Assembly: GCF_963921235.1 (NCBI RefSeq)
Contig: NC_086107.1
Coordinates: forward strand, 86,366,001-86,430,000
DNA from: Mobula hypostoma
Lineage: Eukaryota
Direction: 5' to 3'
Length of the DNA stretch: 64,000 bases
The notes beneath the pieces are model-generated. The model did not search any database, was not told the origin of the DNA, and saw nothing but the letters and a program-made list of their open reading frames with translations. This document shows, piece after piece, positions 8,640-41,229 of this stretch. Every line of letters starts with the position of its first letter. Positions within the stretch are counted from its first letter, which is position 1. Made by a program: the position numbers and the translations under genes.

Positions 8640-9200
8640 TATTTTTGACAGATCCACAATATTTAACTCCAGTCCAATTAAAGGTTAATGTCATCAGAAC
8701 AAGCCCGTGCCATGCCCAGTGACCAAGGTTCAGTTCCAGGTGTGATGAACAGCAGCAATAACTGCAGAATCTGACCCCAACAGTCACTCTTCAACTTGAA
8801 ACTGGATTCATCAAATGTGAAGGTTAAAAATTCAACAAAGAGTTTTTAAAACTGCCTCCCCTGTGTGAACTTGCTGGTATTTGAGCAGGTGAGATGATGG
8901 AGTAAACCTCTTTACTCATACAGGACAAGTGTGCAGTCTCTTGGTGTGAACTCACTATTGCCTCACAAGGTGGGATCACTGAGTGAATCCTTTCCCACAG
9001 TCTGAGCTGGTGTGAACTCACTGGTATGCCTGCAGGTGGGATGAACAAGAAATTCCTTCTCACACAACCAGCAGGTGAATGGCCTCTCCCCAGTGTGAAC
9101 TCTCTGATGTGTCAGTAGCCCAGATAACTGAATGAATCCCATCCCACAGATGGAGCAGGTGAACAGACTCTCCTCAGTATGAAATCTTGGGTGTCTCTGC
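8640..9200 (-). pseudogene. C2H2 ZNF relic with family 3' UTR
   Basis: [32 protein letters not shown] then frameshifted fingers; 8640-8800 matches the 3' UTR at 14080-14250. Confidence 0.85.
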
Positions 9201-9389
9201 AAAGTTCAAAAATCAAAGTAAATTTATTATGAACGTACATTTATATCACCATATAAAACCCTGAGATCGGTTATCTTGCGGGCATATACAGTAAATCCAA
9301 GAAACACAACAGAATCCACAAAACAGCTGACCGAATGAGACGGACAATAATCAACACGCAAAAGATAATAGAAAAGCATAATCATACTT

Positions 9390-13390: not shown

Positions 13391-14079
13391 AAAGCATAGG
13401 AGTTTCTCAACCAGTCGAAAGCCTCACAAACAGGTACTGTATGTGTCAACAAAGTCAATCTAATTTTTTTCTCTATCAATCAGCTTCCAAATGTTGCTAC
13501 CCAGTCATTCGTTGCCGCGCCCCTGCTGTTCATCACATGCTCTTACCATTACCTCTGTCCAGAGCCCCAAGCCCTGCCCTGCGCTGACCTGTCTCTGGTT
13601 TCTGACCCTGCTTCATTGAACATCCAGCTATCATTCTCCATTCTGTTTTCAGACTTTACATGATGGTGGTATATTCTAACAACCCAGCTGCGAGAGACAC
13701 AGTTCTTCAGAAGCAGTGAAAATGCTGCATAACACTGAAATGAGCCGAAAAAAGAGATTAACTACCAGTGTCATTCTTCCTCAGCTCAGAGATTTGAGGG
13801 CAAAGAACATGTCAGACATAACTGCAGTCAGCTCCTCATCTTTTTCAGTCTGGAGAAAGTCCTGCAGGAAATGCAAGGGAAACCACATCATCCACAGAGT
13901 GACTGCTTGGAACCCACTGCCACAGGAAGAGCAGGAGGTGAACTGCAGGGATGGATTTAGAAGGACTGTCATCGAACAGAGACACTGGTAGGGAACAGCT
14001 GGGCTGAGTTGACCTTACTCTACATTAGGTGTGTTGTAGATTCACTTGGTACCTGAGGCAGAGTTTGAAATAGAACTGA

Positions 14080-14085
14080 TTTATT
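14080..14085 (-). terminator. Poly(A) signal of ZNF gene A
   Basis: AATAAA ~180 nt after the stop, in a UTR block also kept in relics at ~41115 and ~57760. Confidence 0.6.
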
Positions 14086-14265
14086 TGTCAGAGATCCAGA
14101 ATATTAAACTCCAGTCCCATTAAAGGTGAACATCAGCAGCAGAAACTCCTCCCATGCCCAGTGACCAGGGTGCAGGATTGGGTGTGATGAGCAGCAGCAA
14201 TAATTACAGAGTTTGACACCAACAGTCAGTTTTGAACTTGCCTCTGGATCCAGCATGCAGCTTAT

Positions 14266-15030
14266 TTAAACTTTTTCCCCAGTGTGAACTCGGTAGTGTG
14301 CCACGAGGTTGGATGAGTGAGTGAATCCCTTCCCGCATTCGGAGCAGGTGAACGGCCTCTCTCCAGTGTGAACTCGGTAGTGGACCACAAGGGTAGATGA
14401 CTGAGTGAATCCCTTCCCACATTCAGAGCAGGTGAACGGCCGCTCCCCTGTGTGAATTCGCTGATGTAGCTTCAATTGAAATGATCGAGGAAATCCCTTC
14501 CCACAGTCTGAGCAGATGAAAGGCATCTCTCCAGTGTGAACTGACTGGTGTGCCAGTAGGTCAGATGACCGAGAGAATCCCTTCCCACAGTCCAAGCAGG
14601 TGAATGGCCTCTCCCCAGTGTGAACTTGCTGATGTACCTTCAGATGAGATGACCGTGTGAATCTTTTTCCACAGTCTGAGCAGATGAATGGTTTCTCCTC
14701 AGTGTGAACTGACTGGTGTGCCAGTAGGTGAGATGACCGAGAGAATCCCTTCTCACAATCTGAGCAGGTGAATGGCCTCTCTCCAGTGTGAACTGACTGA
14801 TGTGCATGTAGATTGCTTAACTGAGTGAATCTCTTCCCACACACAGAACAGGTGAATGGCCTCTCCCCAGTGTGCACTTGCTGGTGTCTCTGTAGGTGGG
14901 ATGACTGAGTAAATCTCTTCCCACAGTCTGAGCAGGTGAATGGTCTCTCCCCGGTGTGAACTCGCTGATGTACCCTCAGTTGAGATGAGTGAGGAAATCC
15001 CTTCCCACAGTCTGAGCAGGTAAACGGCAT
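14266..15030 (-). CDS. C2H2 zinc-finger protein A, 9 tandem fingers, no KRAB/SCAN/BTB
   Basis: 254 aa ORF with 9 CxxC..HxxxH units and TGERPF linkers; the upstream finger has C>R and an in-frame TGA, so the start codon is uncertain. Confidence 0.8.
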
Positions 15031-15955
15031 CTCCTCAGTGTGAACTGACTGGTGTGTCTGTCAGTGGGATGACTGCGTAAATCCCTTCCCACAATCTGAG
15101 CGGGTGAACAACCTCTCCCCAGTGTGAAATCGCATTTGATCAGGAGATCAAATGACCAAGTAAATAGCTTCCCACACGCAACAGCTGAAGTGTCTCTTTC
15201 CCTTGTAAACTCTGCAGGTGGGCTGACTGAGCGAATCTCGTCCCACATATGGAACAGGCGAACAGTCTCTCAATGGAGTGGATTTTCTGATGTGTCTTCA
15301 GCATGAATGACCCAATGATTCGCTTCCCACCATCTTGTCTTGTCCATACTGCACCAACCGCTGCCACTGGGCTATAAACGTGCAGGAGCAATGTGTGGTT
15401 AAGTGCCTTGCTCAAGGACACAACACGGTGCCTCAGCTGAGGCTCAAACTCGCGACCTTCAGATTACTAGTCCAATGCCTTAACCACTTGGCCACGCGCC
15501 AATACATCAGAACAGGTGAACCCTCTCACTTTTGATGTACCTTCAGGCTGGATGAGTAAGTAAATCCTCTCTCACACACAGAGTAGGCGAATGGCATCTG
15601 CACACTAAACTCCCTGGAGTGACTGTGGGTAGACTGGGTGAGTGAATCCCTTCCCAGACACACAACAGGTGAATGGCTTCTGTCCCCACAGTGAAGTCAC
15701 TAGCGTGTCTGCTGGTCAGTTGAGTGAGTGAATTTCTTCCCAGACAGGTAACAGGTAACTGGCCTCTCCCATGGTGAATTCATTGGTGTGTCTGTAGTTT
15801 GGCTGAGTGAGTGAATCTCTTCCCAGACACAGAATAAGTGAATGGTCTCTCTCCCCACAATGAACTCACTGCTGGGTCTGTGGGTCAGCTGAGTGAGCGA
15901 ATCCCTTGTTGTTGTGCTTGAAATTCCCGTGCACAAATTCTTTGCAGTTTCTAAC
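15031..15955 (-). other. 5' part of ZNF A exon 2, made of decayed fingers; acceptor TACAG|GTTAG at 15956/15955
   Basis: Disabled finger repeats; acceptor context matches gene B at 28903/28904. Confidence 0.7.
15335..15500 (-). mobile_element. tRNA-derived SINE inserted in the ZNF A 5' region
   Basis: A-box TGGCCAAGTGG, B-box-like GAGTTTGAGCC, core GTGTCCTTGAGCAAGGCACTTAACC. Confidence 0.75.
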
Positions 15956-16924
15956 CTGTAGAAAGATTTACAAAAGACATCAGTGGGTGAAGGACAGCAT
16001 TTTGGATGAGATCATTTTAGTCTCGATGATGAGATCTGACATCACACTGTTACAAGGTTCAACCCACACTAGAGGAACAACTCCATCTTCTAAATGGGCC
16101 CTGATCAGGCGTCCAGACTGACCATCAAATTCTCTATTTTCCTGTCTATATCACAATGGGACATCTCTACCCACTCCCAATCTGTGATGTCACTCAGTTT
16201 GTCTCTCTGCATTTGTATTATTTCAAGTTCTAGTCACGTCCCACAGCGGTACAAAGAGCACATGGCTGATCCTGGAGACTTTCTCATTACTCTGACCCCT
16301 TGCCCCCTCAGGTGATTGACGGTGGTGAACTCATCGATGGCAATGCCAATGAATATGAAGGGGAGGGCAGCAGTCTTTCTCATTGGAGTGTAGCACTATT
16401 GTCATGTGAAAGCTACAGGTCACTTGTTACCCAGGACAAGATAATTGATATCATTATGTACCCAGAGAGAATGGGACAACACATGTCCTCACAGGTACAA
16501 AGGTCCAGAGCAAGAGGAGGTGGAACACACTTGATTTTCTCAAGAACTAAATCTGATGGAAGGATTTTGTGCTTGTTTCCCATGCAACACTAATTGCCAT
16601 TTTCATTGACTGAATGGTAGACTCTTCACTTGAGACTAACTCAGAGATACATTTCTGTCCAGTTCCTAATCCTTGAATTAAATAACCGGAGCTCAGCAGT
16701 GTCTGAGATCCATCCACTCCTATTCCCCCTGCCTGCACTTCCAAACACACCCTATGGACTGACAGTGAATGCCGTGGTAGTGTCAACAACAGTTGCCTCT
16801 GTACTAGAACTGCCTGTGAACAACTCTACCAAAAGTGAAGTCCACAAGATGGGTCATGAAGCAAGTCCCTTCATTTCCTATCAGATGTGATTCTGCTACC
16901 ATTGGAGCCTGTTATTTACATTCT

Positions 16925-18330
16925 GATGGTGTGTCCTTCAAAGATACACTTAATGTCAGAGAAATGTATACAATATACATCCTGAAATGCTTTTTCTTCA
17001 CAACCATCTACAAAAGCAGAGGAGCGCCCCCAAAGAGTGAATGACAGTTAAATGTTAGAACCCCAAAGTCCCCCAGGCTCCCCTCCCTCCCGTGTGTAAG
17101 CAGCAGCGACCCCCCCTTCCCCATCAGCAAAAAAAAAATCAGCACCCACCACCAAGCACTCAAGCGTACAGCAAAGACACAGACTTGCAGTACCCCAAGG
17201 ACTACTCATTCACCCAGTATTCGACATACCATCTAACAAGGGAGAAAGGGGTGTCCCCGTTTCACAGCGAGAGGGGAGACATAACAAACAACTTGCTGGT
17301 TTATGATGTTAAAAGTCTGTTGCTTTGCTTTTTCTGAGCTCTGTGTCCAAAGATCTCAGGTCTCTGGGCACACAGCCACAGATCTTCCGACTCCCATGAT
17401 CTCCTGCCGGGACACCGACCTTCGATCCGCCTGTCTCCAGAGCCAGGAGATCTTGGACATACGAAGGCGAGCAAAGCTCTCAGGCCGCCGCCTTGGTGTG
17501 TCAAATAACAGCCAGTCATGAAACTCCAAGAGCGGGTCCCATTCTCTCAAAGAACTAAAGTCAGCATGTAACTGCAGGTCAGGGTCTTCAAAAGTACCTT
17601 GAAAGAAGAAAATAGAGATATTAAAGATAGAAATAGAGCTGTTTTCGAAGATGCAAGCAAAGGATTCACCGTTTAGCGCCATCCACAAGGTGATCTGGGC
17701 GATCTAGCACTTTGCTGCCTCTTAGGGAGTTGGCTGAAGTCTCCAGCGAAGTGTACAGCCTGGAGTCAGGGCGTGGACCCATGACTGACTCCATCTCCCA
17801 CTGATTAACGCACTGAGATAGATTATAATCATTGAAGTGGACGCAGAGGGCGAGCGAGTGTTCAGCACCATCTATCTTTGGCTGCTGCCAAAGGAAGGTC
17901 TCTCTCTCTCTCTTTATGCACCAGAGGGAAGGTCCTTGCATTTGAATGACCTCTGTCCCTCGATGCTGTCAGAAGACGGTGCTGGAGCAAGGTTTAATCA
18001 ATGCAGTTTGTGGACTTTGGACTCTAATTCATGTATGATGTGTTTCTAGCTTTTCTGGTTGCCCCTTTTTGTTGCTAGTTTGGGCAATTTCGAAGCTGAG
18101 TGGCCTGCAGATAATGAACACTGAGCTGAACTGAACTATGGCTTTTAATTCTGTTTCCCAGCTCGTTATGTTGCTTTTTGCACGATTCGTTGTTTCTTTT
18201 TCGCGTGGGTGGAGTGGGCTTGATGTTTTTTTTCTTTGAATGGGTTCGATGGTTATCGTGGGGAAGAATCTCAGAGTTGTATACTGCATGCATTCTTTGA
18301 TAATAAATGTACTTTGAATAAGAAACAAAA
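16925..18330. repeat. Intronic LINE 3'-UTR-derived repeats in both orientations
   Basis: Tail motifs shared with ~1540-1595, 9200-9380 and 22160-22400; absent from the paralogous gene B intron. Confidence 0.5.
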
Positions 18331-18339
18331 GTCAGTCCC

Positions 18340-18845
18340 AGCAATACGCATGCGCTGCAGAAATGGCGCCAGCAGCTTCGCTCATCAGCGGAAAGCTCCC
18401 CGGGGCCCGGGTACGGATCTTGAGGCTGAGAGAGGAAAAAGGACCAGGACTCTCCCGGGTTTGCAGGGCCACGGTGTGTTCGGAGATCGCAACAATTGTC
18501 CCCCAGTCGCGGTGCGAACGCCAGTGCCAACTGAACCATCGCCCGGAACCTCGCCCTTACCTGCGGTGGATCCTCCTGAGCCTGGTGGCCACTGAGCGCA
18601 TGCGCGACATTCGGGAATGTATCGACCCTGACGCTTGCGTATTAGATCGAAGGTGAATTCTGAAGCGCGGAGGTTCTTGGGTAAACAAGATGCCATTAAT
18701 AGTGCCCGCAAGCACCTGTTCCACGCCGCACGCCTCAAGAACAGTCAATGCTTTTATGAAGAAAACTCAGCAGCTACTTTAACGCAGCAAGGTCCCACAA
18801 ACAATATACTCAATATCAACAGGTATTCTGTGTGTCAACTGTCAA
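18340..18845 (-). promoter_or_regulatory. CpG-rich promoter and non-coding exon 1 of ZNF A
   Basis: CGCATGCG (NRF1-type) at 18347-18354 and 18597-18604; donor CAG|GTAAG with intron starting at 18560; homologous to 27575-28050. Confidence 0.75.
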
Positions 18846-18875
18846 TGCGGACCCTACTTACAAACGCAGATATAA

Positions 18876-19095
18876 AACACGAGATTCCGCAGATTCTCGA
18901 AACATTAAGTGACACACAAATTCAGGAGGAACTCAGCAGGTTGTGCAGCATCGATGCCGAAGAATAAACAGCCGAGGCTCAATCCGAACCCTTTCACCAG
19001 TCACCAACATGTTGAAGGAAAGGTCTTGACCCAAACCTTCGACTGTTTATTCTTCTCCATTGATGCTGCCTGACCCACCGAGTTCCTCCAGCGTT
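18876..19095. mobile_element. Inverted pair of Penelope tails
   Basis: Minus tail 18876-19000 followed by plus tail 19010-19095, imperfect inverted repeat. Confidence 0.65.
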
Positions 19096-19149
19096 TCTTC
19101 AAAAATAAACAACCTTTTTTATTTCTTTCCAGCCGTTTCCACGTGCTGA

Positions 19150-20290
19150 TCCATGCCCTGAGCTCATCTGCCTTTCATACGATACTTCTTGCATTGAAGA
19201 TACGCAGCTCAGGACATTAGACGCATAATACTCAATCTTTTGATTCCTGACTTTGTCTAAGGTTTGTGTCTCCACAACCTCTACACTATCTGTTTTAGCA
19301 CACTGGTTCCCATCCCCTGCAACTCTAGTTGAACCCCCGCAACCTGTGCAGCACTAGCAAACATTCTCACTAGGATGTTAGCCCGACTCCAGTTTAAATT
19401 TCAGATGCAAACCACCTCTCCTGTACAGGTCCCATTTTCCCCGGGGTGAGAGCCCAGTGATCCAAAAATCTGACACCTTCCCTTCTACACCAAACCCTCA
19501 GCCACGTATTAAAGTGTATAACCTTCCTACTTCCGGCCTCACTAGCATGCGGCATGGGTAGCAATCGTGCAACTACAGCCCTAGAGGTCCTGCCCTTTAA
19601 CTTAGCACCAAACTCTCTGAACTCATTTTACAGAACCTTGTCATTCTCTCTACCAATGTCATTGGTACCTACATGGACAACAACCTCCGACTGTTAATCC
19701 TCCCACTTAAGAATGCTGAGGACTCGACTGGCGATGTCTTGGACCTTCCACATGGTAACAACGTACCATCCAGGAACCTCATTCTCATCTAGAAAACCTC
19801 CTTTCTGATCTCCTAACTAATTTATACCCTATCACTACAGCTCACCTCTTCTCCCCCCCTCCCTTCACACTGAGTCACAGAACAATATTCGGTGCCAGAG
19901 ACATGACTGCTGTGACTTTCCTCTGATAGGTCATTTCTGCCCCAACCCCTCCTCATCCCCCCCCCCCACAAACCTATCCGGATTGGTACACCTGTTACTA
20001 AGGAGGATGACCACTGTGTAACTTTGCACTGGCTTTTAACCCTTTCCCCTTCCTATCACCCAGTGTCTTGTGTCCTGCATCTTGGGTGTAACTACCTCTT
20101 TGCAATCTATAACCCATCAGCCTCGCAAATGATCTGGAGTTCATCCAGTTTCAGCTCCAATTCCCTGACAGAGTGCTAGAAGCTGCAGTTGAATATACTC
20201 CTCACAGGTGTAGTCGTCCGGGACACTGGAGGTCTCCCTGTCTTCCCACATAACACTATCCTGCCTGGCATCTCTACTGTTCTATCTGTG
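19150..20290 (-). mobile_element. CR1 LINE ORF1 region (SGNH esterase), decayed
   Basis: VHVGTNDIG at ~19652-19678 on the minus strand. Confidence 0.75.
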
Positions 20291-20413
20291 CATACATAAA
20301 AAAGGAAAAAAAAATAACAAGAAATAAGCTGTGGGGAGAAAGTCTACCTGCAGCTTTTCACTTTCTCTCACTCAAGCCTATCCTTGCTGAAGCCTTGAAG
20401 AGCCAAAGGGTTG

Positions 20414-20575
20414 GAACCCTTCGTCAGGACTGAAGAGGGAAGGGGCAGAGGACCTATAAAGAAGGTGGGGTCTCTGCCCCTTCCCTCTTCAGTCCTGACG
20501 AAGGGTTCTGGCCCAAAACATCAACTGATCGTTTCCACGGATGCTGCCCGACCTGCTGAGTTCCTCCAGCATGTT
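20414..20575 (+). mobile_element. Penelope tail with a perfect 37 bp inverted repeat
   Basis: 20414-20450 is the exact reverse complement of 20472-20508. Confidence 0.8.
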
Positions 20576-20734
20576 GTGGGATTTTCCTTGTACTCTCTAC
20601 AGTAAGACTGATACAGAACATCTGTTTATCCCTCTGCACCTCCCTTTATTTTCACTTAGAATGCAGTACCCACAGACAAACTTACAGTATGTTTTACATT
20701 TCCAGCTGATTTGTGATTTTTTTCCCCTTCCTAA

Positions 20735-21030
20735 TTGGTGGCCTAATAGCGTAGCAGTTAGTGTGATGCTATTAAAGCTTATGGTGGCAGAGTTCAATTC
20801 TGGTGTCCACTGTAAGCAAGTCTGTACATTCCTGCCCGTGTGTGTGTGTGTTTCCTCTGGGTGCTATGGTTTCCTCCCGCAGTCCAAAGACATCCTCGTT
20901 GGTAGTTGGTTATTTGTTCATTGTAAACTCTCCTGTGGTTAGGCTAAGGTTAAATCTGTGGGTTGCTGGCAGTGCAGCTCGAAGGCCAGAAGGGCCTATT
21001 CTGCGATGTATTTCTAAAATGTAGTAAAAT
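20735..21030 (+). mobile_element. V-SINE/HE1-like SINE
   Basis: Degenerate tRNA-like head, GTTTCCTCTGGGTGCTATGGTTTCCTCCCGCAGTCCAAAGAC core, CR1-like tail. Confidence 0.6.
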
Positions 21031-21199
21031 AATCTCTTAGTCATTCTTTGCAGTATTTATTCCTGGGTTCTGACCTGTCACTATTTATATCTTATATTCT
21101 TTTTGTTAAATGTTATATGAACATTTTTGATCATAAGTGATGCAACCTCCTCTTTTACAATCTGGACTTGTGGTGCTGTACTGGAGTCTTGCCTCCAAT

Positions 21200-22140
21200 C
21201 TTCTTCTTCTTCATGTGCCTTGTGTGTTACATGCTTGGGTGATCATGGCTTTCCACGTCGAATGATCCCATGCAGTGTCAATGATATCTCACACACTTAG
21301 ATCCATTAGTTCTTTCACAGTGTCCATATATTTTCTTCTCTGTGGATTGTCACCTTGTTGCGGTGGAGAAGCTCGTGTGGTCCTGAGATCCCGAGAGCGA
21401 TGCCGTCTGGAGCTATGCTCCTGGTAGGGTCACCCATGGCGGTAAGGTCGAGGGTGAGGTCCCTGACAAAGAACAATCCAACCAAGACCTCAACGGTGGA
21501 ACAGGCAGGCGAAGTTACTTCGAACTCAATGGCTGTGAAGGCGGATGAAGGCTACAACAAATCCATCAGCTCCAATTGTTGTGGTTTCCATGTCATTGGA
21601 ATCAGTTGGTTGATTTGTGAAATATCGTGTGCTTCTTGGAGTGCAACATCAAGTACACATTAAACAAATACATGCACAGGCATCTTCGCTCTGTACGGAA
21701 TGAAGACCATCATCCCCGACCTCGAGGGATAGCCACAACAACAATATTTTCTTCTTTGCCTTCCTCTTCCGCGTTTCCCAGGTATACAGCCTTATAACGT
21801 AAGGCATTCTATTTCTCCCTTTCTGATGACATGGCCCAGGAATCTAAGTTTCCTCTCACTTGATGTTCTCATTAAAGATCTTTTTGTATGGGCACGTTGG
21901 AGTCTCATTAGTTACCCTATCTCTATATGATATTTTCACCATTCTTCTAAGAAGCTACATTTCTGTTGCTTCTAAGTTTCTTTGGAGTTCTGGTGTTATA
22001 GTCCATGTCTCGGAAGCACACAGCAAGATTGACCAGATGTAACATATTATGTGACAGGCCTCCAATATTAACTTGTTTAAATTTGTAGTGCAGCAGGGTC
22101 CCACTGAATCCCTTTTTACATGGTAAATTCCAAGTCATAA
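21200..22140 (-). mobile_element. RTE-like LINE 3' fragment with (GAA)n tail
   Basis: KLRFLGHVIRK-type C-terminal reading; (TTC)n at ~21200-21212. Confidence 0.6.
21340..21743 (+). mobile_element. Complete ~400 bp non-autonomous RTE-derived retroposon
   Basis: 12 bp TSD ATATTTTCTTCT at 21328-21339 and 21744-21755; RTE/Expander-like 5' end; (CAA)n tail. Confidence 0.75.
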
Positions 22141-22919
22141 TACTTTGTCACAAAGTGCTCTTACCAAAGATTCAAAGTACATTTATTATCAAATTACGTT
22201 TACAGAATACAACTCTGAGGTTCGTCCTCCTGCAGGTAGCCACGAATACCATGGAAACTATTGAAGAAAACATCAAATACCCAACTCGTGAAAAAGAATA
22301 AATTGTGCAAATGGCAAAAAGCAAGCAGATAACACATAGAGTTTCAAATGTTAAACCAGGAGTTCTATAGTATTCTGTTTAGTTCGGTTCAGCATCATGC
22401 CACGGGCCGAATGCAGGTCTTACGGCTTTTGTCTGTACCTATCGCCCCAATCAAACTGCTCAAAAACAGCAAAAAAAATAACCAGAATTCAGGGAAAAAT
22501 GTAACATGAGCACCCATGTCCCCCAAAATGAGTCCACTGCCTCTCTGGTCAATTGCTGCAACATGGATTTCAAGACTCCCACACTTTCCTTCGACAGCAG
22601 CTGGCAAGGGGGAGAGGAAAGCTGGTCAGATGCTAGCAGACGGCACTGAACACCCATTCCTCCTCGTCAGCTTCAACCTCGCTTGATGCCTCAGTCAGAG
22701 AGAAGCAATGCAGCCCATCATGGGTTTGTGCCCCGTCTCTAAGCTAACAGGCCTCCAGGCCACAAACTCCACTCCGAATTCTCACTGAACTCCCTCGGAG
22801 ACGTCGAAGCAACAGAACACTCAACCAGTCTAAAAACACACCATTAAAATGTAAATTACAGGTCTCAATCATACACAGCTTAGTAGCAGAATCATATCTG
22901 AAAGAAGAACTAAAAGAAC

Positions 22920-23910
22920 AATACGCACAATGTACCGGAGGAGCTCAGCAGGTCAGATGCCATCTATGGATGGGAATAAACAGTGACGTTTCAGGCCAAG
23001 ACAATTCGTCAAGACTGGAAAGGAAGGGAGAAGTCAAAATAGGAATGTGGGAGGAGGGGACGAAGAAGTACAAGGTGACCGGTGATGGGCGAAATTGGGA
23101 GAGGAGGAGGGGTGAATTAAAGTCAAGTCAAATCAAGTCAAATTTATTTATAAAGCACATTTGAAATAACCCATGTTGACCAAAGTGCTGTACAATCCAT
23201 AACAGGTAGCTAAAATCACAAATACAAGAAACAGATATAAACAAGAAGGAACACAGCTTATGGGTACAAGCCAAAATTCAGCCACATCAGGAAGATTCAA
23301 ATGCCAGTGAATAAAGTAAGTTTTGAGCCTGGACTTAAAAGAGTCAAGGGAGGGGGCAGATCTGATAGGGAGGGGAATGCTGTTCCACTTACATTTAGAT
23401 CGCGGGACAGCCAGGAGCCCCAAGTCAGCCGACCTAAGGGACTTGGAAGTAGAGTAAGTGGTCAGAAGGTCTGTGATATAAGGGGGAGCCAGCCCATTTA
23501 GGGCTTTAAAAACAAACAGGAGAACCTTAAGATCAATTCTAAACCGTACTAGCCAGTGGAGAGAGGCCAGGATAGAAGTAATATTGTCCCTCTTCCGGGC
23601 GTTGATTGGTGGAAGTAATATGATCCTTCTTCCTGGGAGTTGATTGGTGGAAGAGCTAGAAGGCTGGAGAAGGGGGAATCTGATAGAAGAGGACAAAAGA
23701 CCATGGAAGAAAGGGAAAGGGGAGGAGCACTGAAGGGAGGTGATGGGCAGGTGAGAAGAGAATGTGTGACATGGAAACAAGAATGGGAAATAGTGAAGGA
23801 AAGGAGGGGAGTAATTTCCAGAAGTTCGAGAAATCGATGTTCATCCCATCAGGTTGGAGGTTACCTAGTTGGAATACAACCCCTCTTCTCCTTCACCATT
23901 CCCCATTCCC
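22920..23910 (-). mobile_element. Penelope tail split by an L2 insertion
   Basis: Degenerate hammerhead at ~22981-23015; purine tract; MNIDFSNF at ~23820-23845. Confidence 0.75.
23118..23600 (-). mobile_element. L2 LINE 3' fragment
   Basis: DNITSILASLHWLVRFRIDLKVLLFVFKALNGLAPPY...FKSRLKTY; AATAAA plus (TTGAC)-type tail. Confidence 0.85.
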
Positions 23911-24740
23911 AAACTTGGCCACAAAGGCATCAATTCTATCATCCAAATTGTTGACATATAACATAGAGTGGTCACGACACGGACCCCTGTGGAATACTAT
24001 AAATCACCAGTAGCCAACTAGAAAAGCCTCCTATTATTAACACTCTTTGCCTCTTGCCAATCAGCCAATGCTCTATCCATGCTAGGACCTTTACTGAAAT
24101 ACCATGGACCTTTAACTTATTCAGTAGCCTCATATGTGGCACTTTGTCTGAAGATCCAAGTACACAAATTATGAGCGTACAACAGTTATTGTTTGTCTAT
24201 CCTGCTTGTTATTTCTTCAAAGATGTGTCAGACAAGATTTTCTTTGGAGAAAACTATGTGACTTTGGCCCATGTTATCATCTCCCTCCAAGTACCCTGAA
24301 ACATCATTCTTAACAATTGACTCCAATATCTTCCCAACCACTGACTTCAGGCCAAATTGGCCCATAATTTCCTTTCTCCTGCCTCTCTCCCTTTTTGGAG
24401 AGACATTTGCAATTTCCCTGTGATCTGGACAACGCCAGAATCCATTGATTCTCAAAAGTTCATTTACTAGTGCTTCCACAATCTCTTCAGCCATCTCTTT
24501 TGGAACCCTGGGGCGCAGACCCTTCCCAAGCAGCTTCTCTCTAATAATGGCAACTTTGCTCACTTCTGCCTTGACACTTTCGAACTTCAGGCATACTGCT
24601 AGTGTCTTCTACCATGAAGACTGATGCAAAATACTCACAGTATTCAGCTCATCCACCATTTCCTCATTCATTACTACCTCTCCAGAATTATGTTTTAGTG
24701 GTCTGACATCGACATTTGACTCTCTTTTACTGTTTAAAAT
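23910..24740 (-). mobile_element. CR1 LINE RT fragment
   Basis: PRVPKEMAEEIVEALV...IANVSP...SVVGKILESIVK. Confidence 0.8.
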
Positions 24741-25854
24741 CTGAAGAAACATGACTTTCAATACAACTTATTTGAGTCAACCATTGTTTCATACGTTCTA
24801 TGAAAGCAGTACTAAGGCTAAAAATGTTTGAAAAACAACTATTTTGCTTTCACCTGTTTGTCCCTGGGAAATAATGGGATTAGCATGTGATGTTGCTTAA
24901 CAACAGCTTCACAGTGACTGGTCAAATCCCCAAGTCAAGTTAGCACTTGTAAGTTGTTTTCCTTATTTCCCATAAAATCCTTAATTAGTGATTTTCATCC
25001 TTTAATTTTGTTCACATTTGTTTTACATGTATACTCTTTTTGAAGACTTTTGATTCTATTTGCTAAAGCTTTCAAATTAAGTTTAACTTCTCTTTTGCAA
25101 ACCCCAACTTCAAGGTCACTGACGACAGTTTCACACTTCTATGCACTCATGTTACTTTCTCCCTATTGAGCCTCTTGCAATTAACTCTTTGTTCACCTGC
25201 AGCGCATCTGCAAAACACACCAGCGATATCCTGTTCAATAAACCTAGGAATCAGACTGATCGCGCATCCACAGAGTTTAAACCAGGGCAAACAAACAGTG
25301 TTTATTTCAAATATCGGCAACCAGGACCAGGTTTCAGCACTTCAATACAGCGAAGCAACAAAATCCTCAGGCAAACTCCGTGCAATCGAGCAACGGTCCC
25401 CAATGGACAGGCAGCGCTGACCAATCAAAACTGTGTTCAAACCATGAATACACAGCATGAACGAACAAAAGTCTGAGGAACATCTGAAAGCAAGCTGCTC
25501 CAGTTGCTGGCATTCAGTCTTCCCAGTGTTGTGATTCCAATTTCTCCAACGGGTCCGGGGCAATCGTTTGCCAGAGACTGGTATTCATTTGGAATAACTA
25601 CGTGCTGCGGTTACTTGAAAACAAACCAAAACAGCTGAGACGGTGTACAGGAGTTGGCACTGTGTGACGTGCTCCCAGTTCGCTGAGTTCCAAGTCAAAA
25701 AAGGTATGATCGATCCTTTGTTATCAAACCAGCCAAAATGAGCAATCTGCAGTGACAAAAACTAACAAAACTAAAATTAATGACGTGTCCCAATTAGTAT
25801 AATTAAGTGAAAGTAATAAATAAGCGTACTTAGCAGAGAACAAAAATAAACTTT

Positions 25855-26090
25855 TTTTTATTGAGATTCAGTGTGGATTAGCCCCTCTGGCCCTTTGAGC
25901 TGCCTTGCCCAGCAATCCCACAATTTAATCCTCGCCTAATCTCGGGACAATTTACAATGGGCAATTAACCTACCAACTGGTACGGCTTTGACTGTGGGAG
26001 GGAACCGGAGCACCCAGGGTGAAACCACGCAACCACAGGGAGAACGTACAACCTCCGTACAGTCAGTGGGGGGACCATTCCCCGGTTGCC
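25855..26090 (-). mobile_element. V-SINE/HE1-like SINE
   Basis: TGTGGGAGGGAACCGGAGCACCC...GGGAGAACGTACA. Confidence 0.65.
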
Positions 26091-26329
26091 TCTAACTCTC
26101 AACTAGACTAAACTGACTACCTGAGAGAAAGCAAGAATATGAAACTATACTCATTTGCTTCTATCGCACCCCAACCCACGTGACAAATGCCCATAAAAAA
26201 ACACGCAACACAAAATACAATACAGACAGACAGAAATTAACCTCCATGGCTCCTACAGTTGTCGATCCTTGGAACAGAAGTCAAATCTCATCCCAGCTGG
26301 AAACATGCATCTGCTTTCATCCAAGCAGA

Positions 26330-26715
26330 AACACCAGCAAGTTTGCAATGGGGGGAGGCCGTTCACCTGCTTCATGTAGGTAGGGATTCATCCCAGCATC
26401 TGACCTGCAAAAGCACCAGACAGTTCACATTTGTGAGGCTTCAGTGAGTCAGCAATAAGTAGAGGCAACACTTCTGTGAGTGAGCAAAGAGATTTACTCA
26501 TTCGTCCCACCAGCAACTTCACACCAGGGAGAAAGTTCAAATAATATGCATGTTAACATTTTTAACCACCATAGTGACTGAATTCACTTGCAAGTTCCTG
26601 ACCGATCGTTAATGTCAGATTCTGCAGGCTGCTTATCACATCCAGGACTGAACCCCGGTCACTGAGCATTGGAGGGGTTTGCTCTGCTGATGTCAGGCTT
26701 AAATTAACCTGGTGC
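26330..26715 (+). pseudogene. C2H2 ZNF relic with family 3' UTR
   Basis: GGRPFTCFM*VGIH-like decayed finger; UTR motif CATCCAGGACTGAACCCCGGTCACTGAGCATTGG as in other copies. Confidence 0.65.
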
Positions 26716-27124
26716 TTACTGTCTGTCTCTTGTCACACACCCATTGTGCGGTAGAGGGGCCACTCAGTCCAACTGGTCACTGTCTGTGTTTCTGTTCCAT
26801 AACAGTACTTTCAAACCCACCCCTGCTGTTCACCTCTCACTCTCCCTGTGATGACAGGTTACAACTGGTCTCCACTCTGTTGGTTTCCCTAAAGTTTCCT
26901 CTATGACTTTCTGCAGAGAGCAGAAAACAATTTCACTGGGGTTTTGTCTCAAATATTCCTCTTCCCTCAGGGCGAAGGGACAATATCCTGGGTGGTTCAA
27001 CTTCTTCCCTGCTCTCCTCGATGTTATGGGTTGTTTTCACTGATTTCAAAGGGTTGTACTTCACACAGCTGGTTTGTTCTAAACCACTCTCCTCTAAATT
27101 ATAAGAACAGATGACAATGCTATC

Positions 27125-27572
27125 AGGTTGGAGGAGAAACATCTTACTTACTATCTGGTTAGTCTCCAAACTGATGGCAAGAGCATGGATTTCTCGAACT
27201 TTGGGTATCTGCCCCCCCCTTCTCTTTCACTTCCCCATTCCTGTTTCCCTCTCACACCTTATGTCCTTACTTGCCCATCATCTCCTTCTGGTGTTCCTCT
27301 CTCTTCCTTTTCCTCCATGGTCGTCAGTCCTCTCCTACCAGATCCCCCCCCCCCGCCCTTTCCAGCCCTTTATCTCTTTCACCAATCAACTTCCCAGCTC
27401 TTCACTTCACCCCGGTTCCACCTATCTCCTTTCCAGTCGCGATAAGGGATCTCAGCGCGAAACGTCGGCTGTTTACTCTATTTTCCATAGAATCTGTCGG
27501 CCCTGCTGATTTCCTCCAGCATTTTGTATGTGTTGCTTTGGATTTCTAGCATCTGCAGATTTTCTCGTGCTT
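27125..27572 (+). mobile_element. Penelope tail with partial hammerhead
   Basis: LEEKHLTYYLVSLQTDGKSMDFSNF; ...CGCGAAACGTCGGCTG at ~27456-27471. Confidence 0.8.
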
Positions 27573-27574
27573 GT

Positions 27575-28050
27575 GACACACGGAATGCCTGTTGATGTTG
27601 ACTGTAGGACTGTGGGAGCTTGCTGTATTAAAGTAACAGTTTTGACTGTGTTTGAAGCGTGCGGCATGGAGCCGTTGCTTGTAGACACTATTATCAACTC
27701 AGCCCCCTCCACGTTTAGAGTTGACCATCAGTGGCCCCTCGACTGCGCAAGCGTGCAGGTCGCTGATATCGCCGAATATCGCGCATGCGCGTAGTGGAAA
27801 ACAGGCTTTGGCGCATCGGCAGCAGGTAGGAGCGGGGCTCCGGTGCGTGTTCATTGGAGCCGGCGTCCGCACCGTGACTGAGGGTCAATTGTCGTGAGCT
27901 GTGGACACCAAGTGGCACCGCAAATCCTCGACAGTCGTGGTCTTTTTGCTCTCTGTCAGCCCCACGATCCGTACTCGGGCCCTGGGGAGGTTTTCTGCTG
28001 ATAGGCTAAAGCGCTCGCGTCATGGCTGTGGCGCATGCGCATCGCCGGTA
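27575..28050 (+). promoter_or_regulatory. CpG-rich promoter and non-coding exon 1 of ZNF B
   Basis: CGCATGCG at 27782-27789 and 28032-28039; donor CAG|GTAGG with intron starting at 27826. Confidence 0.75.
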
Positions 28051-28903
28051 CATTGATGGATAGATGGGGTTCTCGTTCGTGGGGGTTTCTGGGTATAGAA
28101 GCAGCCATGGGTGACACTCCCAACGCTTTCCCCGCTAGTCTGAAGTGTAGATTGGAAACGTGCAGGTGGATCTATCAGGCACTACAAAGCTCCAGCAATC
28201 TAAATCCAAGAATTATAGAATTCGGAACAAAAATATAGTTCCGAGTTAATTTTGGATGAAGAGTCCACCTTCCAGTCAATGAAAACGCCAATTAGTGCTG
28301 CATGGGAAAAAGAAAATCTTCCCAACAGTTTCAGTTCTTGAGAAAATCACCTTTGTCCGACCTTCTCTTGTTCTGGTCCTTTCTACCTATGAGAGCATGT
28401 TTTGTCTCATTCTTTCTGGGTACCTATTGATATCAAACACCTTTGTCCTGGGTAACAAGTAACCTGTAGCTTTGACATCACAGAAGTGCCACACTCCAAT
28501 GAGAAAGGCCTCTACCCTCCCCTTCATATTCATTGGCATTGCCATCGATGAATTCACCACCATCAATCACCTGAGAGGCCAGGGGGTCAGAGTAATGAGA
28601 AAGTCACCAGGATCAACCATGTGCTCTTTGCAGCGTTGTGGGACATGACTAGATCTTGAAATAATATTAATGGAGGGAGCCAAACTTAGCCACGTTATGG
28701 ATTGAAGGTGGGTAGAAATGTCCCATTGTGATGCAGACAAAATAGAGAATTTGATGGTTAGTCCAAATCCCTGATCCAGGCCCAGTTAGAAGATGGAGTT
28801 GTTCCTCCAACTTGTTGTAATGGTGTGATGTCAGAGATCATAGAATGATCTTGTCTGAAATTCTGACTTCACCCATTGATGTCTTTTGTAATTCTTTTTA
28901 CAG

Positions 28904-29330
28904 GTTAGAAACAACAAAAAAAAATTATGTACAGGAGTTTCAAGCACAACAAGGGATTTACTCACTCAGCTGACGCACAGACCCAGCAGTGAGTTCACCG
29001 TGGGGAGAGAGGCCGCTTACCTGTTGTGTGTCTGGGAGGAGATTCACTCAGTCATCCTACGCGCAGACACACCAGTGAGTTGACAAGGGAGAGAGACCGT
29101 GCATGTGTTGTGTGTGTGGGAAAAAATTCACTGGTCATCTCACCTACAGACACACTTGTGAGTTCCACAAGGGAGAGAACATTCATCTGTTGCCTGTGTG
29201 GGAAGAGATTAATTTGGTCATCTGATCTGTTGACACACAGGAAGTTCACACTAGGGAGAGGCTGTACATCTCAGACTGTGGGAAGAGATTCACTCAGTCA
29301 GCCCGCCTGCAGACTCACCAGTGAGTTCAC
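28904..29330 (+). other. 5' part of ZNF B exon 2, made of decayed fingers
   Basis: Acceptor TTCTTTTTACAG|GTTAG at 28903/28904; about four to five disabled finger units before the ATG. Confidence 0.7.
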
Positions 29331-30524
29331 ATGGGAGAGAGACACTTCGACTGTTCCACATGTGGGAAGAGGTTCACTCGGTCATCTGATTTGCTGAAAC
29401 ACCAGCGAGTTCACACAGGGGAGAGGCCGTACACCTGTTCCGAATGTGGGAAGGGATTTACTCAGTCGACCCACCTACTGACACATCAGCGAGTTCACAC
29501 TGGGGAGAAGGCATTCACCTGCTCAGACTGTGGGAAGGGATTCACTTGGTCATCTCAATTAAAGGTACATCAACGACTTCACACTGGGGATAGGCCATTC
29601 ATCTGCTCAGACTGTGGGAAGGGATTTACTCTGTCATCCCACCTACTGGCACACCAGCGAGTTCACACTGGGGAGAGGCCGTTCACCTGCTCAGACTGCG
29701 GGAAGGGATTCACTCGGTCATCTAATCTGAAAGTACATCAACGAGTTCACACTGGGGACATGCCGTTCACCTGCTCAGACTGTGGGAAGGGATTCACTCA
29801 GTCCTCACACCTGAAGGTACATCAGCGAGTTCACACTGGGGAGAGGCCGTATATCTGCTCAGACTGTGGGAAGGGATTCACTCTGTCATCCCATCTACAG
29901 ACACATCAGCGATTTCACACAGGAGAAAGGCCGTACGTCTGCTCAGATTGTGGGAAGCGATTCACTCAGTCATCCCAACTGAAGGTACACCAGCGAGTTC
30001 ACTCTGGGGAGAAGCCTTTCACCTGCTCAGACTGTGGGAAGAGATTCACTTGGTCATCTCACCTACGGACACACCAGTCAGTTCACACAGGGGAGAAGCC
30101 GTTCACCTGCTCAGAATGTGGGAAGGGATTCACACAGTCATCTCAACTGAAGGATCATCAGCGTGTTCACACTGGGGAGAGGCCGTTCACCTGCTCGGAA
30201 TGTGGGAAAGGATTTACTGTGTTGTCCAACCTACAGACACACCAGCGAGTTCACACTGGGGAGAGGCCATTCACTTGTTCTGTGTGTAGGAAGGGATTCT
30301 CTCAGTTATGCACCCTACATGCACACCAGTCAATTCACAGTGGGGAGAGGCCATTCACCTGCTCAGACTGTGGGAAGGGATTCAGTCGGTCATCTCAACT
30401 GAAGCTACATCAGAGAATTCACACTGGGGAGAGGCCGTTTACCTGCTCTGAATGTGGGAAGGGATTCACTCGGTCATCCACCCTTGTGGCTCACTACCGA
30501 GTTCACACTGGGGAAAATGTTTAA
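29331..30524 (+). CDS. C2H2 zinc-finger protein B, 14 tandem fingers, no effector domain
   Basis: 397 aa intact ORF, 14 canonical fingers with TGE(R/K)PF linkers. Confidence 0.92.
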
Positions 30525-30989
30525 ACAAGCAGCTGGATATTTAAACATCACAGTTGCTGAATCCAGAGGAAAGTTCAAAAGTGACTATTGGTTGGATTTC
30601 CTGCTGACTGAAGAAGCCAAACTGACTGCAGGTATGTCTGACATGTTCTTCATCCCTCGTGTGTCTGTGCTGAGAAAGAATGACATTGGTAGTTCATCTC
30701 CTATTCCCTGCAAATATCAATGTTATAGGTCGTTGTCACTGCTTCCAATGAGCTGGGTTGTTAGAACACACCACTGCCCTCTAAAGTCTGAAAGGAGAAC
30801 CACTAGTTGGATGTTGTGTGGAGCAGGGTCAGAAACCAGTGATGAGTGGCAGAGAGCAGAGTTCGGGGCTCTGGACAGGAGCATGTGATCAGGAACAGCC
30901 AATCAGAGCAAGGGGTGGGGTGGATGGCGATGAATGACAGAGTAGCAGTATTTGGAAGCTGAATGACAGAAAAAACAATTGGGTTGACT

Positions 30990-31200
30990 TTGACTGTTGA
31001 CACACAAACACAACGCCTGTTTACATTGAGGATACTCCTTTTGGGAGCTTGCTGTGTTAAACTGGCTACTCAATTCTCATAAAATATGTTGACTGGGGAG
31101 GCAATGCTTGTAAACACTTTCAGTGGCACTGTTCTTACCCAGAAATCTGAGCTTCAGAATGCATTATCTCTGTGGATCGAGTGCACAGGGCCTGAGAGTC
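30990..31200 (+). promoter_or_regulatory. Decayed upstream/promoter block of the next ZNF cassette
   Basis: Matches 27575-27690 and the reverse complement of 18655-18845; cut by the LTR at 31201. Confidence 0.6.
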
Positions 31201-41180: not shown

Positions 41181-41187
41181 GTCAGGA

Positions 41188-41224
<37 letters not shown>
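41188..41224. repeat. (TA)n microsatellite
   Basis: Direct reading; the paralog at ~57840-57927 is compound. Confidence 0.95.

Positions 41225-41229
<5 letters not shown>

What the first reader, a model, noticed from the sequence alone, without database searches (positions are those of the whole stretch)
13420..31200. Effector-less ZNF genes are units of a ~3.4 kb self-contained head-to-tail cassette
Seen: genes A (-) and B (+) share an upstream block, CpG promoter, tiny non-coding exon 1, intron, acceptor (TACAG|GTTAGAAAC), terminal fingers (LKLHQRIH..SSTLVxHYRVH..TGExV*) and 3' flank. The upstream block recurs downstream of each gene (27575-27690 again at 30990-31200; 18700-18845 again at ~13420-13470), so each gene is bracketed by direct repeats. 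Four further relics carry the same 3' UTR (8640, 26330, 40684, 57414). Established: large vertebrate ZNF arrays usually carry an effector such as KRAB or SCAN and often target transposons. Inference: a birth-and-death family of finger-only proteins amplified as a complete transcription unit, possibly a KRAB-independent transposon-recognition system in this lineage.
Basis: partly seen in the sequence, partly recalled or inferred. Interest (0 to 1): 0.7.

Follow-up and report, generated by a model that had tools for sequence, protein, structure and literature searches.

The report
Tandemly duplicated finger-only zinc-finger genes
This is an ordinary cluster of duplicated zinc-finger genes in a shark or ray genome: one copy looks alive, one is eroding and four are wrecks, the proteins are DNA-binding fingers with no attached effector domain, and any role against transposons is untested.

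Summary
Genes A (-) and B (+) are paralogous copies of one gene unit. The unit has an upstream block, a CpG-island promoter with two GCGCATGCGC palindromes 250 bp apart, a GT donor, an intron, the same acceptor, one finger exon and a 3' flank.

The 3' flank runs straight into an upstream block at B's end. It does so behind relic 26316-27131 too, across a repeat insertion. Downstream of A the repeat is only about 31 nt and not significant. All four relics are real.

The best reading is unequal crossing-over and segmental duplication of a whole gene, followed by decay. It is not a mobile cassette.

- **B:** a 14-finger ORF. Its exon 2 appears in transcriptome-like assemblies of two species, one contig breaking at the predicted acceptor. 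A roughly 354-nt deletion removed the family's AATAAA, so B's transcripts run past the 3.4-kb unit.
- **A:** a SINE-like insert, nine decayed fingers and a 9-finger ORF.
- **Both:** ORFs start at linker Met codons behind decayed fingers. dN/dS is 0.26 (framework 0.17, contact residues 0.82). No effector domain was found.

The transposon-surveillance idea is untested and already published in general form. Other readers of this scan noted similar KRAB-less clusters elsewhere in this genome.

The parts
27567..27732 (+). Unit B: upstream block, the first part of the repeat unit
   Evidence: The nhmmer profile of the upstream block scores E 1e-46 here. It aligns to A 18837-18600.
27700..28060 (+). 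Unit B: CpG-island promoter with GCGCATGCGC at 27781-27790 and 28031-28040
   Evidence: GC is 0.60 and CpG o/e 1.04, against 0.41 for the window. The palindromes give 5 matches against 0.29 expected by chance.
27781..27825 (+). Unit B: putative short non-coding leader exon. Its 5' end is not mapped. The donor CAG|GTAGGA follows 27825.
   Evidence: The donor is conserved in A. No ORF is conserved across the junction (read). The junction itself was not seen in the RNA data.
27826..28903 (+). Unit B: intron
   Evidence: Its 3' 737 nt are 82% identical to A 16708-15956. Depth is nil at 28555-28751 in all four transcriptome-like runs and patchy over the rest of the intron.
28904..29330 (+). Unit B: 5' part of exon 2 with five decayed fingers (28951-29342) and two uORFs
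   Evidence: Finger-profile hits carry stops, frameshifts and lost Cys codons. Contigs cover 28916-29299 in X1-X3 and 28901-29299 in X5.
29331..30524 (+). Unit B: ORF of 397 aa, 14 intact C2H2 fingers, with its stop at the end
   Evidence: ORF list, Pfam, all zinc ligands intact, dN/dS 0.26.
30525..31006 (+). Unit B: 3' flank with a deletion of about 354 nt (at 30594) that removed the family's AATAAA
   Evidence: nhmmer places A-flank positions 11-50 and 404-826 here. No AATAAA or ATTAAA occurs before 31350.
30976..31171 (+). Start of the next unit: an upstream-block copy abutting B's 3' flank, with the promoter missing
   Evidence: nhmmer E 2e-53. It aligns over 205 nt to A's upstream block, z = 27.
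18640..18859 (-). Unit A: upstream block
   Evidence: nhmmer E 8e-70.
18330..18700 (-). Unit A: CpG-island promoter with palindromes at 18596-18605 and 18346-18355. The leader exon ends at 18561.
   Evidence: CpG o/e 0.95. Palindromes. Donor.
15956..18560 (-). Unit A: intron, carrying about 1.6 kb (16713-18334) that is absent from B
   Evidence: BLAST blocks. nhmmer finds intron homology only at 16708-15956.
15026..15955 (-). Unit A: 5' part of exon 2 with nine decayed fingers, split by a tRNA-like SINE-type insert at about 15335-15516
   Evidence: Finger-profile hits and their alignment. Insert sequence. ARAGORN finds no tRNA there.
14266..15030 (-). Unit A: ORF of 254 aa, nine intact fingers
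13431..14265 (-). Unit A: 3'UTR (AATAAA at 14085) and spacer
13427..13457 (-). Possible remnant of an upstream block behind unit A; not significant
   Evidence: E 0.42. Score 17 against a shuffle maximum of 16.
8620..9204 (-). Relic: 4.5 decayed fingers plus a 3'UTR with AATAAA
26316..27131 (+). Relic: 2.5 decayed fingers plus 3' flank. A repeat insertion (27123-27572) follows, then B's upstream block. This is a head-to-tail junction.
40679..41374 (+). Relic: three decayed fingers plus 3' flank, next to histone H3
57410..58082 (+). Relic: two decayed fingers plus 3' flank. A recent duplicate of the relic at 40679 (0.97 in the 3'UTR).

Best explanation
This is a local family of Krüppel-type C2H2 zinc-finger genes in an elasmobranch genome. 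It grew by duplication of the whole gene unit and is now partly decaying.

**The unit.** It was about 3.8 kb originally and is made of:
- an upstream block;
- a CpG-island promoter with two NRF1-type palindromes 250 bp apart;
- a short non-coding leader exon;
- an intron of about 1.1 kb;
- one exon holding all the fingers;
- a 3'UTR with AATAAA about 180 nt after the stop;
- a spacer of about 650 nt that runs into the next unit's upstream block.

**How it spread (inferred).** Unequal crossing-over made head-to-tail arrays. Inversion and larger segmental duplications scattered copies, one of them carried along with histone genes.

**State of the copies.**
- Gene B is the live copy. It is transcribed, probably spliced at 28904, and encodes 14 fingers and nothing else.
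- Gene A is eroding from its 5' end.
- Four copies are 5'-truncated relics.

**The protein.** It is a sequence-specific DNA binder. Selection holds the zinc-binding framework while the base-contacting residues vary. Translation starts at a Met codon created in a finger linker, behind fingers that had already died. This start is inferred, not shown. What the protein does once bound is not shown either. My best guess is occupancy or partner recruitment through the fingers themselves.
For: **One shared unit.**
- Homologous blocks run in the same order in A and B.
- The flank-to-upstream-block junction is clear at B and behind relic 26316-27131, and weak at A.
- The upstream block, promoter and intron occur nowhere else in the 64 kb.

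**Several rounds of duplication.** 3'UTR identity between copies ranges from 0.97 to 0.60.

**Both promoters look live.** CpG islands are kept in both, the palindromes are conserved, and so are the GT-AG sites.

**Selection on the ORFs.**
- Pfam finds only C2H2 families, in 14 and 9 fingers.
- All 92 zinc ligands are intact. Variability is concentrated at helix positions -1, +3, +5 and +6.
- dN/dS over five orthologous finger pairs is 0.26. It is 0.17 for the framework and 0.82 for the contact positions. Fisher P = 3e-6.
- In simulation an unselected ORF escapes stop codons with P = 0.007 (B) and 0.06 (A) at d = 0.10. The intron shows 8 indel events in 730 nt, while the ORFs show none.
- A has 4-5 disabling lesions of its own in the 168 nt homologous to B's fingers 1-2, and none in the next 765 nt.

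**Transcription.**
- Small, transcriptome-like assemblies X1-X4 hold 0.36-0.54 of the words of B's unit; X1-X3 and X5 were laid on it.
- X1 and X3 hold only 0.12-0.13 of A's intron and promoter, while true DNA runs hold 0.67-0.75 of it.
- Their contigs cover 28916-29299 and 30485 to at least 31500. Depth is nil at 28555-28751 in all four runs and patchy over the rest of the intron.
- The X5 contig matches from 28901 and carries 13 foreign letters in front. That fits an upstream exon ending in CAG spliced to 28904.
Against: **Transcript structure is not proven.**
- The 27825^28904 junction was not seen directly. Only contigs were available, not raw reads.
- The runs are RNA only by guess.
- One contig (27538-28189) runs unspliced across the donor.
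- X2 has some depth inside the intron.

**Doubts about translation.**
- Neither start codon is canonical, and the two are not homologous. B's ATG aligns with AAG in A.
- B's 5'UTR holds two uORFs. A's 961-nt leader holds nine upstream ATGs.
- Neither ORF is in the 15-billion-protein collection as an exact sequence.

**Limits of the selection test.**
- Finger orthology was assigned by best identity.
- dN/dS rests on only 138 codons.
- Gene conversion from working paralogues elsewhere could mimic constraint.

**Not examined.** Genome-wide copy number and the distribution of the upstream block could not be checked.
Confidence: 0.78

Rival explanations
1. Both A and B are pseudogenes. They would be decaying copies of a gene whose original 5' coding part, and perhaps an N-terminal domain, was lost. 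On this view the finger-only look is an artefact of decay.
For: - Five (B) and nine (A) 5' fingers carry stops, frameshifts and lost cysteines.
- Both ORFs start at chance-looking linker Met codons.
- A has a SINE-like insert and nine upstream ATGs.
- The exact ORFs are not in the protein collection.
Against: - dN/dS is 0.26, with the framework at 0.17.
- Chance survival of the open frames is improbable. By multiplying the stop and indel figures I get about 1e-5 for B and 1e-3 for A.
- Lesions cluster strictly 5' of the ORFs instead of being spread out.
- CpG islands are retained.
- Transcript-like contigs exist for B.
- An annotated shark protein also starts inside a linker and has no recognised domain other than fingers (P0122).

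For gene A alone I put this reading at about 0.4.
Confidence: 0.12
2. The 3.4-kb unit is a mobile or transduced cassette, a captured gene moved by a transposon. The bracketing direct repeats would then be its termini.
For: - Direct repeats of the upstream block flank B.
- The region is dense in repeats, and a repeat sits at the junction 27123-27572.
- Relics lie up to about 30 kb from genes A and B.
Against: - A tandem junction gives the same picture. The 3' flank simply continues into the next unit's upstream block.
- The repeat behind A is not significant.
- The unit encodes no transposition protein.
- Relic flanks stop at different points (about 203, 412 and 646 nt), so there is no fixed terminus.
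- Two of the distant relics moved inside a large duplicated segment that also carries histone H3.
- A and B keep their intron, and relic flanks extend past the poly(A) site, so retroposition is excluded.
Confidence: 0.04
3. The genes do have an effector. It would be encoded by a distant upstream exon that is spliced to the acceptor at 28904 or 15955 in place of the local leader exon.
For: - The 13 unmatched letters at the 5' end of the X5 contig show only that some exon ending in CAG is joined there.
- The local junction was never seen directly.
Against: - A CpG island and a donor conserved between A and B lie about 1.1 kb upstream in B and 2.6 kb upstream in A.
- Any reading frame entering exon 2 meets stops in all three frames before the intact fingers, so an upstream domain could not be fused to them.
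- No domain-bearing ORF was found in the units.
Confidence: 0.04

Closest known systems
Tandemly duplicated KRAB zinc-finger gene clusters of tetrapods, such as those on human chromosome 19 (from established knowledge)
   Same: - Whole-gene tandem and segmental duplication.
- Birth-and-death turnover with pseudogene relics.
- All fingers in one exon.
- A conserved zinc-binding framework with variable contact residues.
- Gain and loss of fingers inside the array.
   Different: - There is no KRAB, SCAN or other Pfam effector domain. KRAB is reported lost or absent in cartilaginous fishes (PMC8455134).
- The first exon is non-coding.
- The ORF begins inside the finger array.
FiNZ zinc-finger genes of cyprinid fish (Wells et al. 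2023, PMC10547256)
   Same: A lineage-specific, KRAB-independent expansion of poly-zinc-finger genes in a non-tetrapod vertebrate. That paper argues that such families co-evolve with transposons across animals.
   Different: - FiNZ genes encode a conserved 28-residue N-terminal domain. Here the protein has no residues before the first finger.
- Transposon repression was tested in zebrafish. Nothing of the kind is tested here.
An annotated shark finger-only protein (Pristiophorus japonicus 'ZFP2-like', P0122)
   Same: - 75% identity to B's last fingers.
- The protein starts at a Met in a linker-like position, directly at the first finger.
- Pfam lists only zinc-finger families for it.
   Different: - It belongs to a different subfamily, with a first finger of the MEKPWKCGDCGKGF type that A and B lack.
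- It is an automatic gene model with a long non-finger C-terminal tail and has not been studied.
Conserved non-coding leader exon of several hundred zinc-finger genes in this same genome (earlier scan finding s1-142176)
   Same: The same gene plan: a non-coding first exon with a conserved promoter and leader, followed by a finger exon.
   Different: I could not compare sequences, so whether A and B carry that particular 113-base block is unknown (a sequence look-up returned nothing).

Membership tests
Krüppel-type C2H2 poly-zinc-finger genes | Tandem C2H2 fingers joined by TGEKP-type linkers | tested here: met
   Pfam zf-C2H2 scores 6.8e-94 (B, 13 stretches) and 9.5e-65 (A, 9 stretches). Regular 28-residue units are seen.
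Krüppel-type C2H2 poly-zinc-finger genes | Intact Cys2His2 ligands, with variability focused on the helix contact positions | tested here: met
   C, C, H and H are invariant in 23 of 23 fingers. Entropy is 2.2-2.4 bits at -1, +3, +5 and +6, and at most 1.4 bits elsewhere.
KRAB zinc-finger proteins | N-terminal KRAB domain (PF01352) | tested here: not met
   There is no KRAB hit in either ORF or in ten sense-strand ORFs upstream of the fingers. Both ORFs start in a linker.
KRAB zinc-finger proteins | Recruitment of TRIM28/KAP1 and silencing of transposons | not testable with these tools
   This needs ChIP-seq or reporter assays.
SCAN, BTB or SET (PRDM9-like) zinc-finger proteins | The corresponding N-terminal domain | tested here: not met
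   No such Pfam family appears.
FiNZ zinc-finger proteins | A conserved 28-residue Glu-rich N-terminal sequence before the fingers | tested here: not met
   The ORFs have 5 (B) and 2 (A) residues before the first finger unit. The family is also restricted to cyprinids (PMC10547256).
Tandem gene array under birth-and-death evolution | Head-to-tail junctions between units | tested here: met
   The flank runs into an upstream block at 31004/30976. Behind relic 26316-27131 it does so with a repeat in between. Behind A the junction is only weak.
Tandem gene array under birth-and-death evolution | Copies of different ages, including pseudogenes | tested here: met
   Pairwise 3'UTR identity runs from 0.60 to 0.97. 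Four copies are truncated relics with stops.
Transposable element or mobile cassette | Own transposition protein or defined termini with target-site duplications | tested here: not met
   The unit has no such coding capacity, and relic ends vary. Target-site duplications were not searched systematically, and no genome-wide copies were available.
Processed retrocopy | Intronless copy that ends at the poly(A) site with an A tail | tested here: not met
   A and B keep the intron. Relic flanks extend about 20 to 460 nt past the AATAAA.

The most novel reading that the evidence does not exclude
Finger-only genes of this family may die by steps rather than at once.
- With no N-terminal domain to keep, a disabling hit in the 5' fingers could be rescued by a new Met codon arising in a downstream linker. 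The array would then erode from the 5' end while the remainder stays under selection.
- Five shared dead fingers, four more in A, and Met codons at linker positions fit this picture.

Taken together with the similar clusters noted elsewhere in this genome, the family could be the elasmobranch counterpart of the KRAB or FiNZ transposon-surveillance systems, acting without any known effector domain.
Probability: 0.15. Interest if true: 0.6.

Novelty: new member of a known kind. Interest (0 to 1): 0.3.

Why it matters
- It adds a dissected example of how a KRAB-less vertebrate lineage builds and loses poly-zinc-finger genes. The promoter, leader exon, finger exon, poly(A) signal and spacer are duplicated together as one unit.
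- If such clusters prove to be numerous and to target transposons in sharks and rays, they would extend the ZNF-transposon arms race to cartilaginous fishes. They would also raise the question of how a finger-only protein silences anything.
- As it stands, this is ordinary gene-family evolution.

Tried and rejected
- **Protein homology searches.** Generic tetrapod KRAB zinc-finger proteins swamped the results, because hits are ranked by summed finger score. The only useful outcome was shark hits (sawshark, cat shark) at 70-75% identity, which are not the same subfamily.
- **Exact look-up of both ORFs.** Neither is in the collection.
- **The scan's own index, by sequence and by relatives.**
- **Direct splice junction.** The contig laying listed no 27825^28904 joint. 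The finger array is a tangle of multi-copy contigs whose joints are uninformative.
- **The SINE-like insert in A.** ARAGORN found no tRNA in it. Rfam found no family at gathering score in 13000-32000.
- **Depletion of upstream ATGs as a sign of a selected 5'UTR.** Rejected, because the ATG density of B's leader (2 in 427 nt) is not clearly below that of the ORF itself (10 in 1194 nt).
- **An ORF running from the ATG inside the first palindrome through the donor into exon 2.** It is open in both genes up to the donor, but it ends after 23 codons in B and is not conserved (read).
- **Literature search on elasmobranch C2H2 expansions.** Nothing specific turned up.

Full report
**Setting.** The window is vertebrate DNA. 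It holds histone H3 and H1 genes, many retroelement fragments and C2H2 zinc-finger sequence. The proteins nearest to the last fingers of gene B come from sharks: Pristiophorus japonicus at 72-75% and Scyliorhinus torazame at 70%. I did not verify the species.

**Is the shared architecture real?** Yes. BLAST and nhmmer show the same ordered blocks in unit B (+) and unit A (-):
- B 27574-28051 matches A 18837-18335 at 69%. This covers the upstream block, the promoter, the leader exon and the first part of the intron.
- B 28167-28950 matches A 16712-15911 at 79.5%, or 82% in a global alignment. This is the 3' part of the intron.
- The finger arrays are about 78% identical.
- The 3' flank, B 30622-31004 against A 13831-13442, is 71% identical.

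Other features of the architecture:
- Both promoters are CpG islands, with o/e 1.04 and 0.95 against 0.41 for the window and 0.2-0.3 in the introns.
- Each promoter carries two GCGCATGCGC palindromes 250 bp apart. That gives 5 matches in the window against 0.29 expected.
- A's intron holds an extra 1.6 kb (16713-18334).
- A's finger exon holds an insert of about 180 nt with tRNA-like box A and box B motifs. ARAGORN does not call a tRNA there.

**Is each gene bracketed by direct repeats?**
- For B, yes. The stretch 30976-31171, which abuts the end of B's 3' flank, matches a profile of the upstream block at E 2e-53. It aligns over 205 nt to A's upstream block (z = 27) and over 58 nt to B's own (z = 10).
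- For A, no. The supposed copy is 31 nt, with E 0.42 and a score no better than the best shuffle.
The relic at 26316-27131 carries 630 nt of the family's 3' flank. A repeat insertion follows at 27123-27572 (multi-copy in the window, with very high depth), and then B's upstream block begins at 27567.

So wherever the far end of the 3' flank survives, the next thing is an upstream block. That is what a head-to-tail tandem array looks like. Within the 64 kb, the upstream block, the promoter and the intron occur nowhere apart from these units.

**The relics.** All four are real. Each keeps two to five decayed fingers, the characteristic ending and the 3'UTR, and each lacks everything 5' of that. 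Pairwise 3'UTR identities are:

| Pair | Identity |
|---|---|
| 40679 relic vs 57410 relic | 0.97 |
| A vs the 40679 and 57410 relics | 0.89-0.90 |
| 8620 relic vs the others | 0.65-0.75 |
| 26316 relic vs the others | 0.60-0.65 |

- These values point to several rounds of duplication at different times.
- The two youngest relics lie inside a duplicated segment, 40353-43630 matching 57081-64000 at 90-95%, that also carries histone H3.
- Relic flanks end at different points and run past the poly(A) signal, so they are neither retrocopies nor elements with fixed ends.

**The unit is not quite self-contained in B.**
- A and three relics share AATAAA about 180-220 nt after the stop.
- B lacks about 354 nt of the 3'UTR, corresponding to A 14215-13862, and that stretch includes this signal.
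- B's next signals are ATTAAA at 31350 and AATAAA at 31552.
- In keeping with this, transcript-like contigs run without a break from 30485 to at least 31500.

**Are the genes alive?** The finger exon has two very different halves. Scanning with a DNA profile of the intact fingers finds 19 units in B and 18 in A.

*Decayed half.*
- B's first five units and A's first nine carry stops, frameshifts or lost cysteines.
- Units d1-d4 match one-to-one between A and B. They share the same TGA at the Arg position of HQRVH in at least the first three, and d2 shares the same lost cysteine. These lesions most likely predate the A/B split.
- CGA-to-TGA is a CpG hotspot, so some of these stops could be parallel changes.
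- A's d7, d8 and d9 correspond to B's d5, F1 and F2. In the 168 nt that match B's intact F1-F2, A has two frameshifts, two stops and a Cys-to-Arg change of its own. In the next 765 nt it has none.

*Intact half.*
- The remaining 14 (B) and 9 (A) fingers have every zinc ligand intact. Variability is concentrated at helix positions -1, +3, +5 and +6.
- Over five orthologous finger pairs, dS is 0.345 and dN 0.088, so dN/dS is 0.26. It is 0.17 for framework codons and 0.82 for the four canonical contact positions. The excess of synonymous change is significant, Fisher P = 3e-6.
- In simulation an unselected ORF of B's length escapes stop codons with P = 0.007 at 10% divergence per lineage. For A the figure is 0.06.
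- The intron shows 8 indel events in 730 aligned nt, while neither ORF has one.

I conclude that both open frames were held by selection for most of the time since the two copies split. B looks like a working gene. A has extra dead fingers, the insert, and a 961-nt leader with nine upstream ATGs, so it is truncated at best and may be dying.

**Where does the protein start?**
- Both ORFs begin at Met codons in finger linkers. B reads H-M-G-E-R, where the family has H-T-G-E-R. A reads T-E-E-M-P-F, where the family has T-G-E-K-P-F.
- The two sites are not homologous, and B's ATG aligns with AAG in A.
- B's leader has two short uORFs of 21 and 40 codons.
- No reading frame from the leader exon survives into the intact fingers, because all three frames hit stops. 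An upstream domain therefore could not be fused to them.
- Pfam finds no domain in ten sense-strand ORFs between the upstream blocks and the fingers, and only C2H2 families in the ORFs.
- An annotated sawshark protein also starts directly at a finger and has no other recognised domain (P0122).

The finger-only reading is therefore supported. Translation from these start codons is inferred, not shown.

**RNA evidence.** Only assembled contigs were available.
- Study P1's X1-X4 and study P2's X5 are small assemblies (0.11-0.17 Gb of contigs), labelled "RNA?" by guess. X1-X4 hold 0.36-0.54 of the words of B's unit, and exon 2 makes up about 57% of that unit.
- X1 and X3 hold only 0.12-0.13 of A's intron and promoter. 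Large DNA assemblies of the same organism (2.2-2.8 Gb) hold 0.67-0.75 of it. The small runs therefore behave like transcriptomes.
- Their contigs cover the unique parts of B's exon 2, at 28916-29299 and from 30485 onward, at depth 8-22. Scattered intergenic pieces reach only 2.4-4.3. Intron bin 28555-28751 is empty in all four runs.
- The X5 contig comes from a second, related organism. It matches from 28901 and has 13 unmatched letters in front. That is what is expected if an exon ending in CAG, as the local leader exon does, is spliced to 28904, because the intron also ends in CAG.

Against a clean picture:
- No 27825^28904 joint was listed.
- One contig (27538-28189) crosses the donor unspliced.
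- X2 has some depth inside the intron.
- The tool itself warns that holes in coverage prove nothing.

**What it is.** This is an ordinary tandem and segmental gene family under birth-and-death evolution. Its members encode effector-less Krüppel-type DNA-binding proteins. It resembles tetrapod KRAB-ZNF clusters and cyprinid FiNZ genes in its dynamics, but it fails their defining test, which is an N-terminal domain. KRAB is reported as lost or absent in cartilaginous fishes (PMC8455134). The general claim that zinc-finger families co-evolve with transposons across animals is published (PMC10547256). Nothing here tests transposon targeting.

**Related notes in this scan.** Other readers noted similar KRAB-less clusters on other pieces of this genome (s1-142677, s1-143424, s1-144487; all unchecked). 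A follow-up reported a non-coding leader exon shared by several hundred zinc-finger genes (s1-142176). I could not test any of these.

**Unexplained.**
- The 3' part of the intron and the dead fingers d1-d4 are less diverged (JC about 0.20) than synonymous sites (0.345) and than the promoter and 3' flank (69-71% identity).
- A gene-conversion tract or some constraint on the leader could explain this. If it was conversion, the shared lesions are younger than the rest of the unit.
- The strict 5' clustering of lesions, together with linker Met codons just behind the last stop in both genes, suggests stepwise 5' erosion with new start codons. I rate that as a possibility, not a finding.

Noticed in passing
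window 40353-43630 and 57081-64000: A segmental duplication (90-95% identity) carries a zinc-finger relic and a histone H3 gene (42542-42952 and 62907-63317, both on the - strand). The H1 gene at 43928-44551 (-) lies just past the aligned part, which is cut off by the end of the window. A sawshark gene model (P0130) fuses histone-fold domains to zinc fingers, so the ZNF-histone neighbourhood may be shared among sharks.
   Followed up: partly
window 27781-27790, 28031-28040, 18596-18605, 18346-18355: Two GCGCATGCGC (NRF1-type) palindromes lie exactly 250 bp apart in both promoters, one just before the donor and one inside the intron. There are 5 matches in the window against 0.29 expected. This is the subject of earlier finding s1-144640.
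   Followed up: partly
window 28167-29260 versus 16712-15600: The 3' part of the intron and the dead 5' fingers are less diverged between A and B (JC about 0.20) than synonymous sites of the intact fingers (0.345) and than the promoter and 3' flank (69-71% identity). This could be a gene-conversion tract or a constrained leader.
   Followed up: no
window 13003-13379 and 9390-9846: A block of 250-380 nt (73-85% identical) lies just downstream of unit A and again just upstream of the fingers of the relic at 8620-9204. Its nature is unknown. It has no match to the intron of A or B.
   Followed up: no
window 15335-15516 (-): A tRNA-like SINE-type insert sits inside A's finger exon. It has box A and box B-like motifs and a conserved core. 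ARAGORN calls no tRNA and Rfam finds no family.
   Followed up: partly
window 52876-54699 (-): Remnants of an LTR-retrotransposon integrase (Pfam Integrase_H2C2 at 1.5e-18 and Integrase_p58_C at 2.3e-7). Further repeat-like ORFs at 33113-33580, 60210-61103 and 23148-23780 gave no Pfam hit.
   Followed up: partly
window 30625-30635: A good donor-like site, CTGCAG|GTATGT, lies in B's 3'UTR. The laid contigs run through it unspliced.
   Followed up: partly
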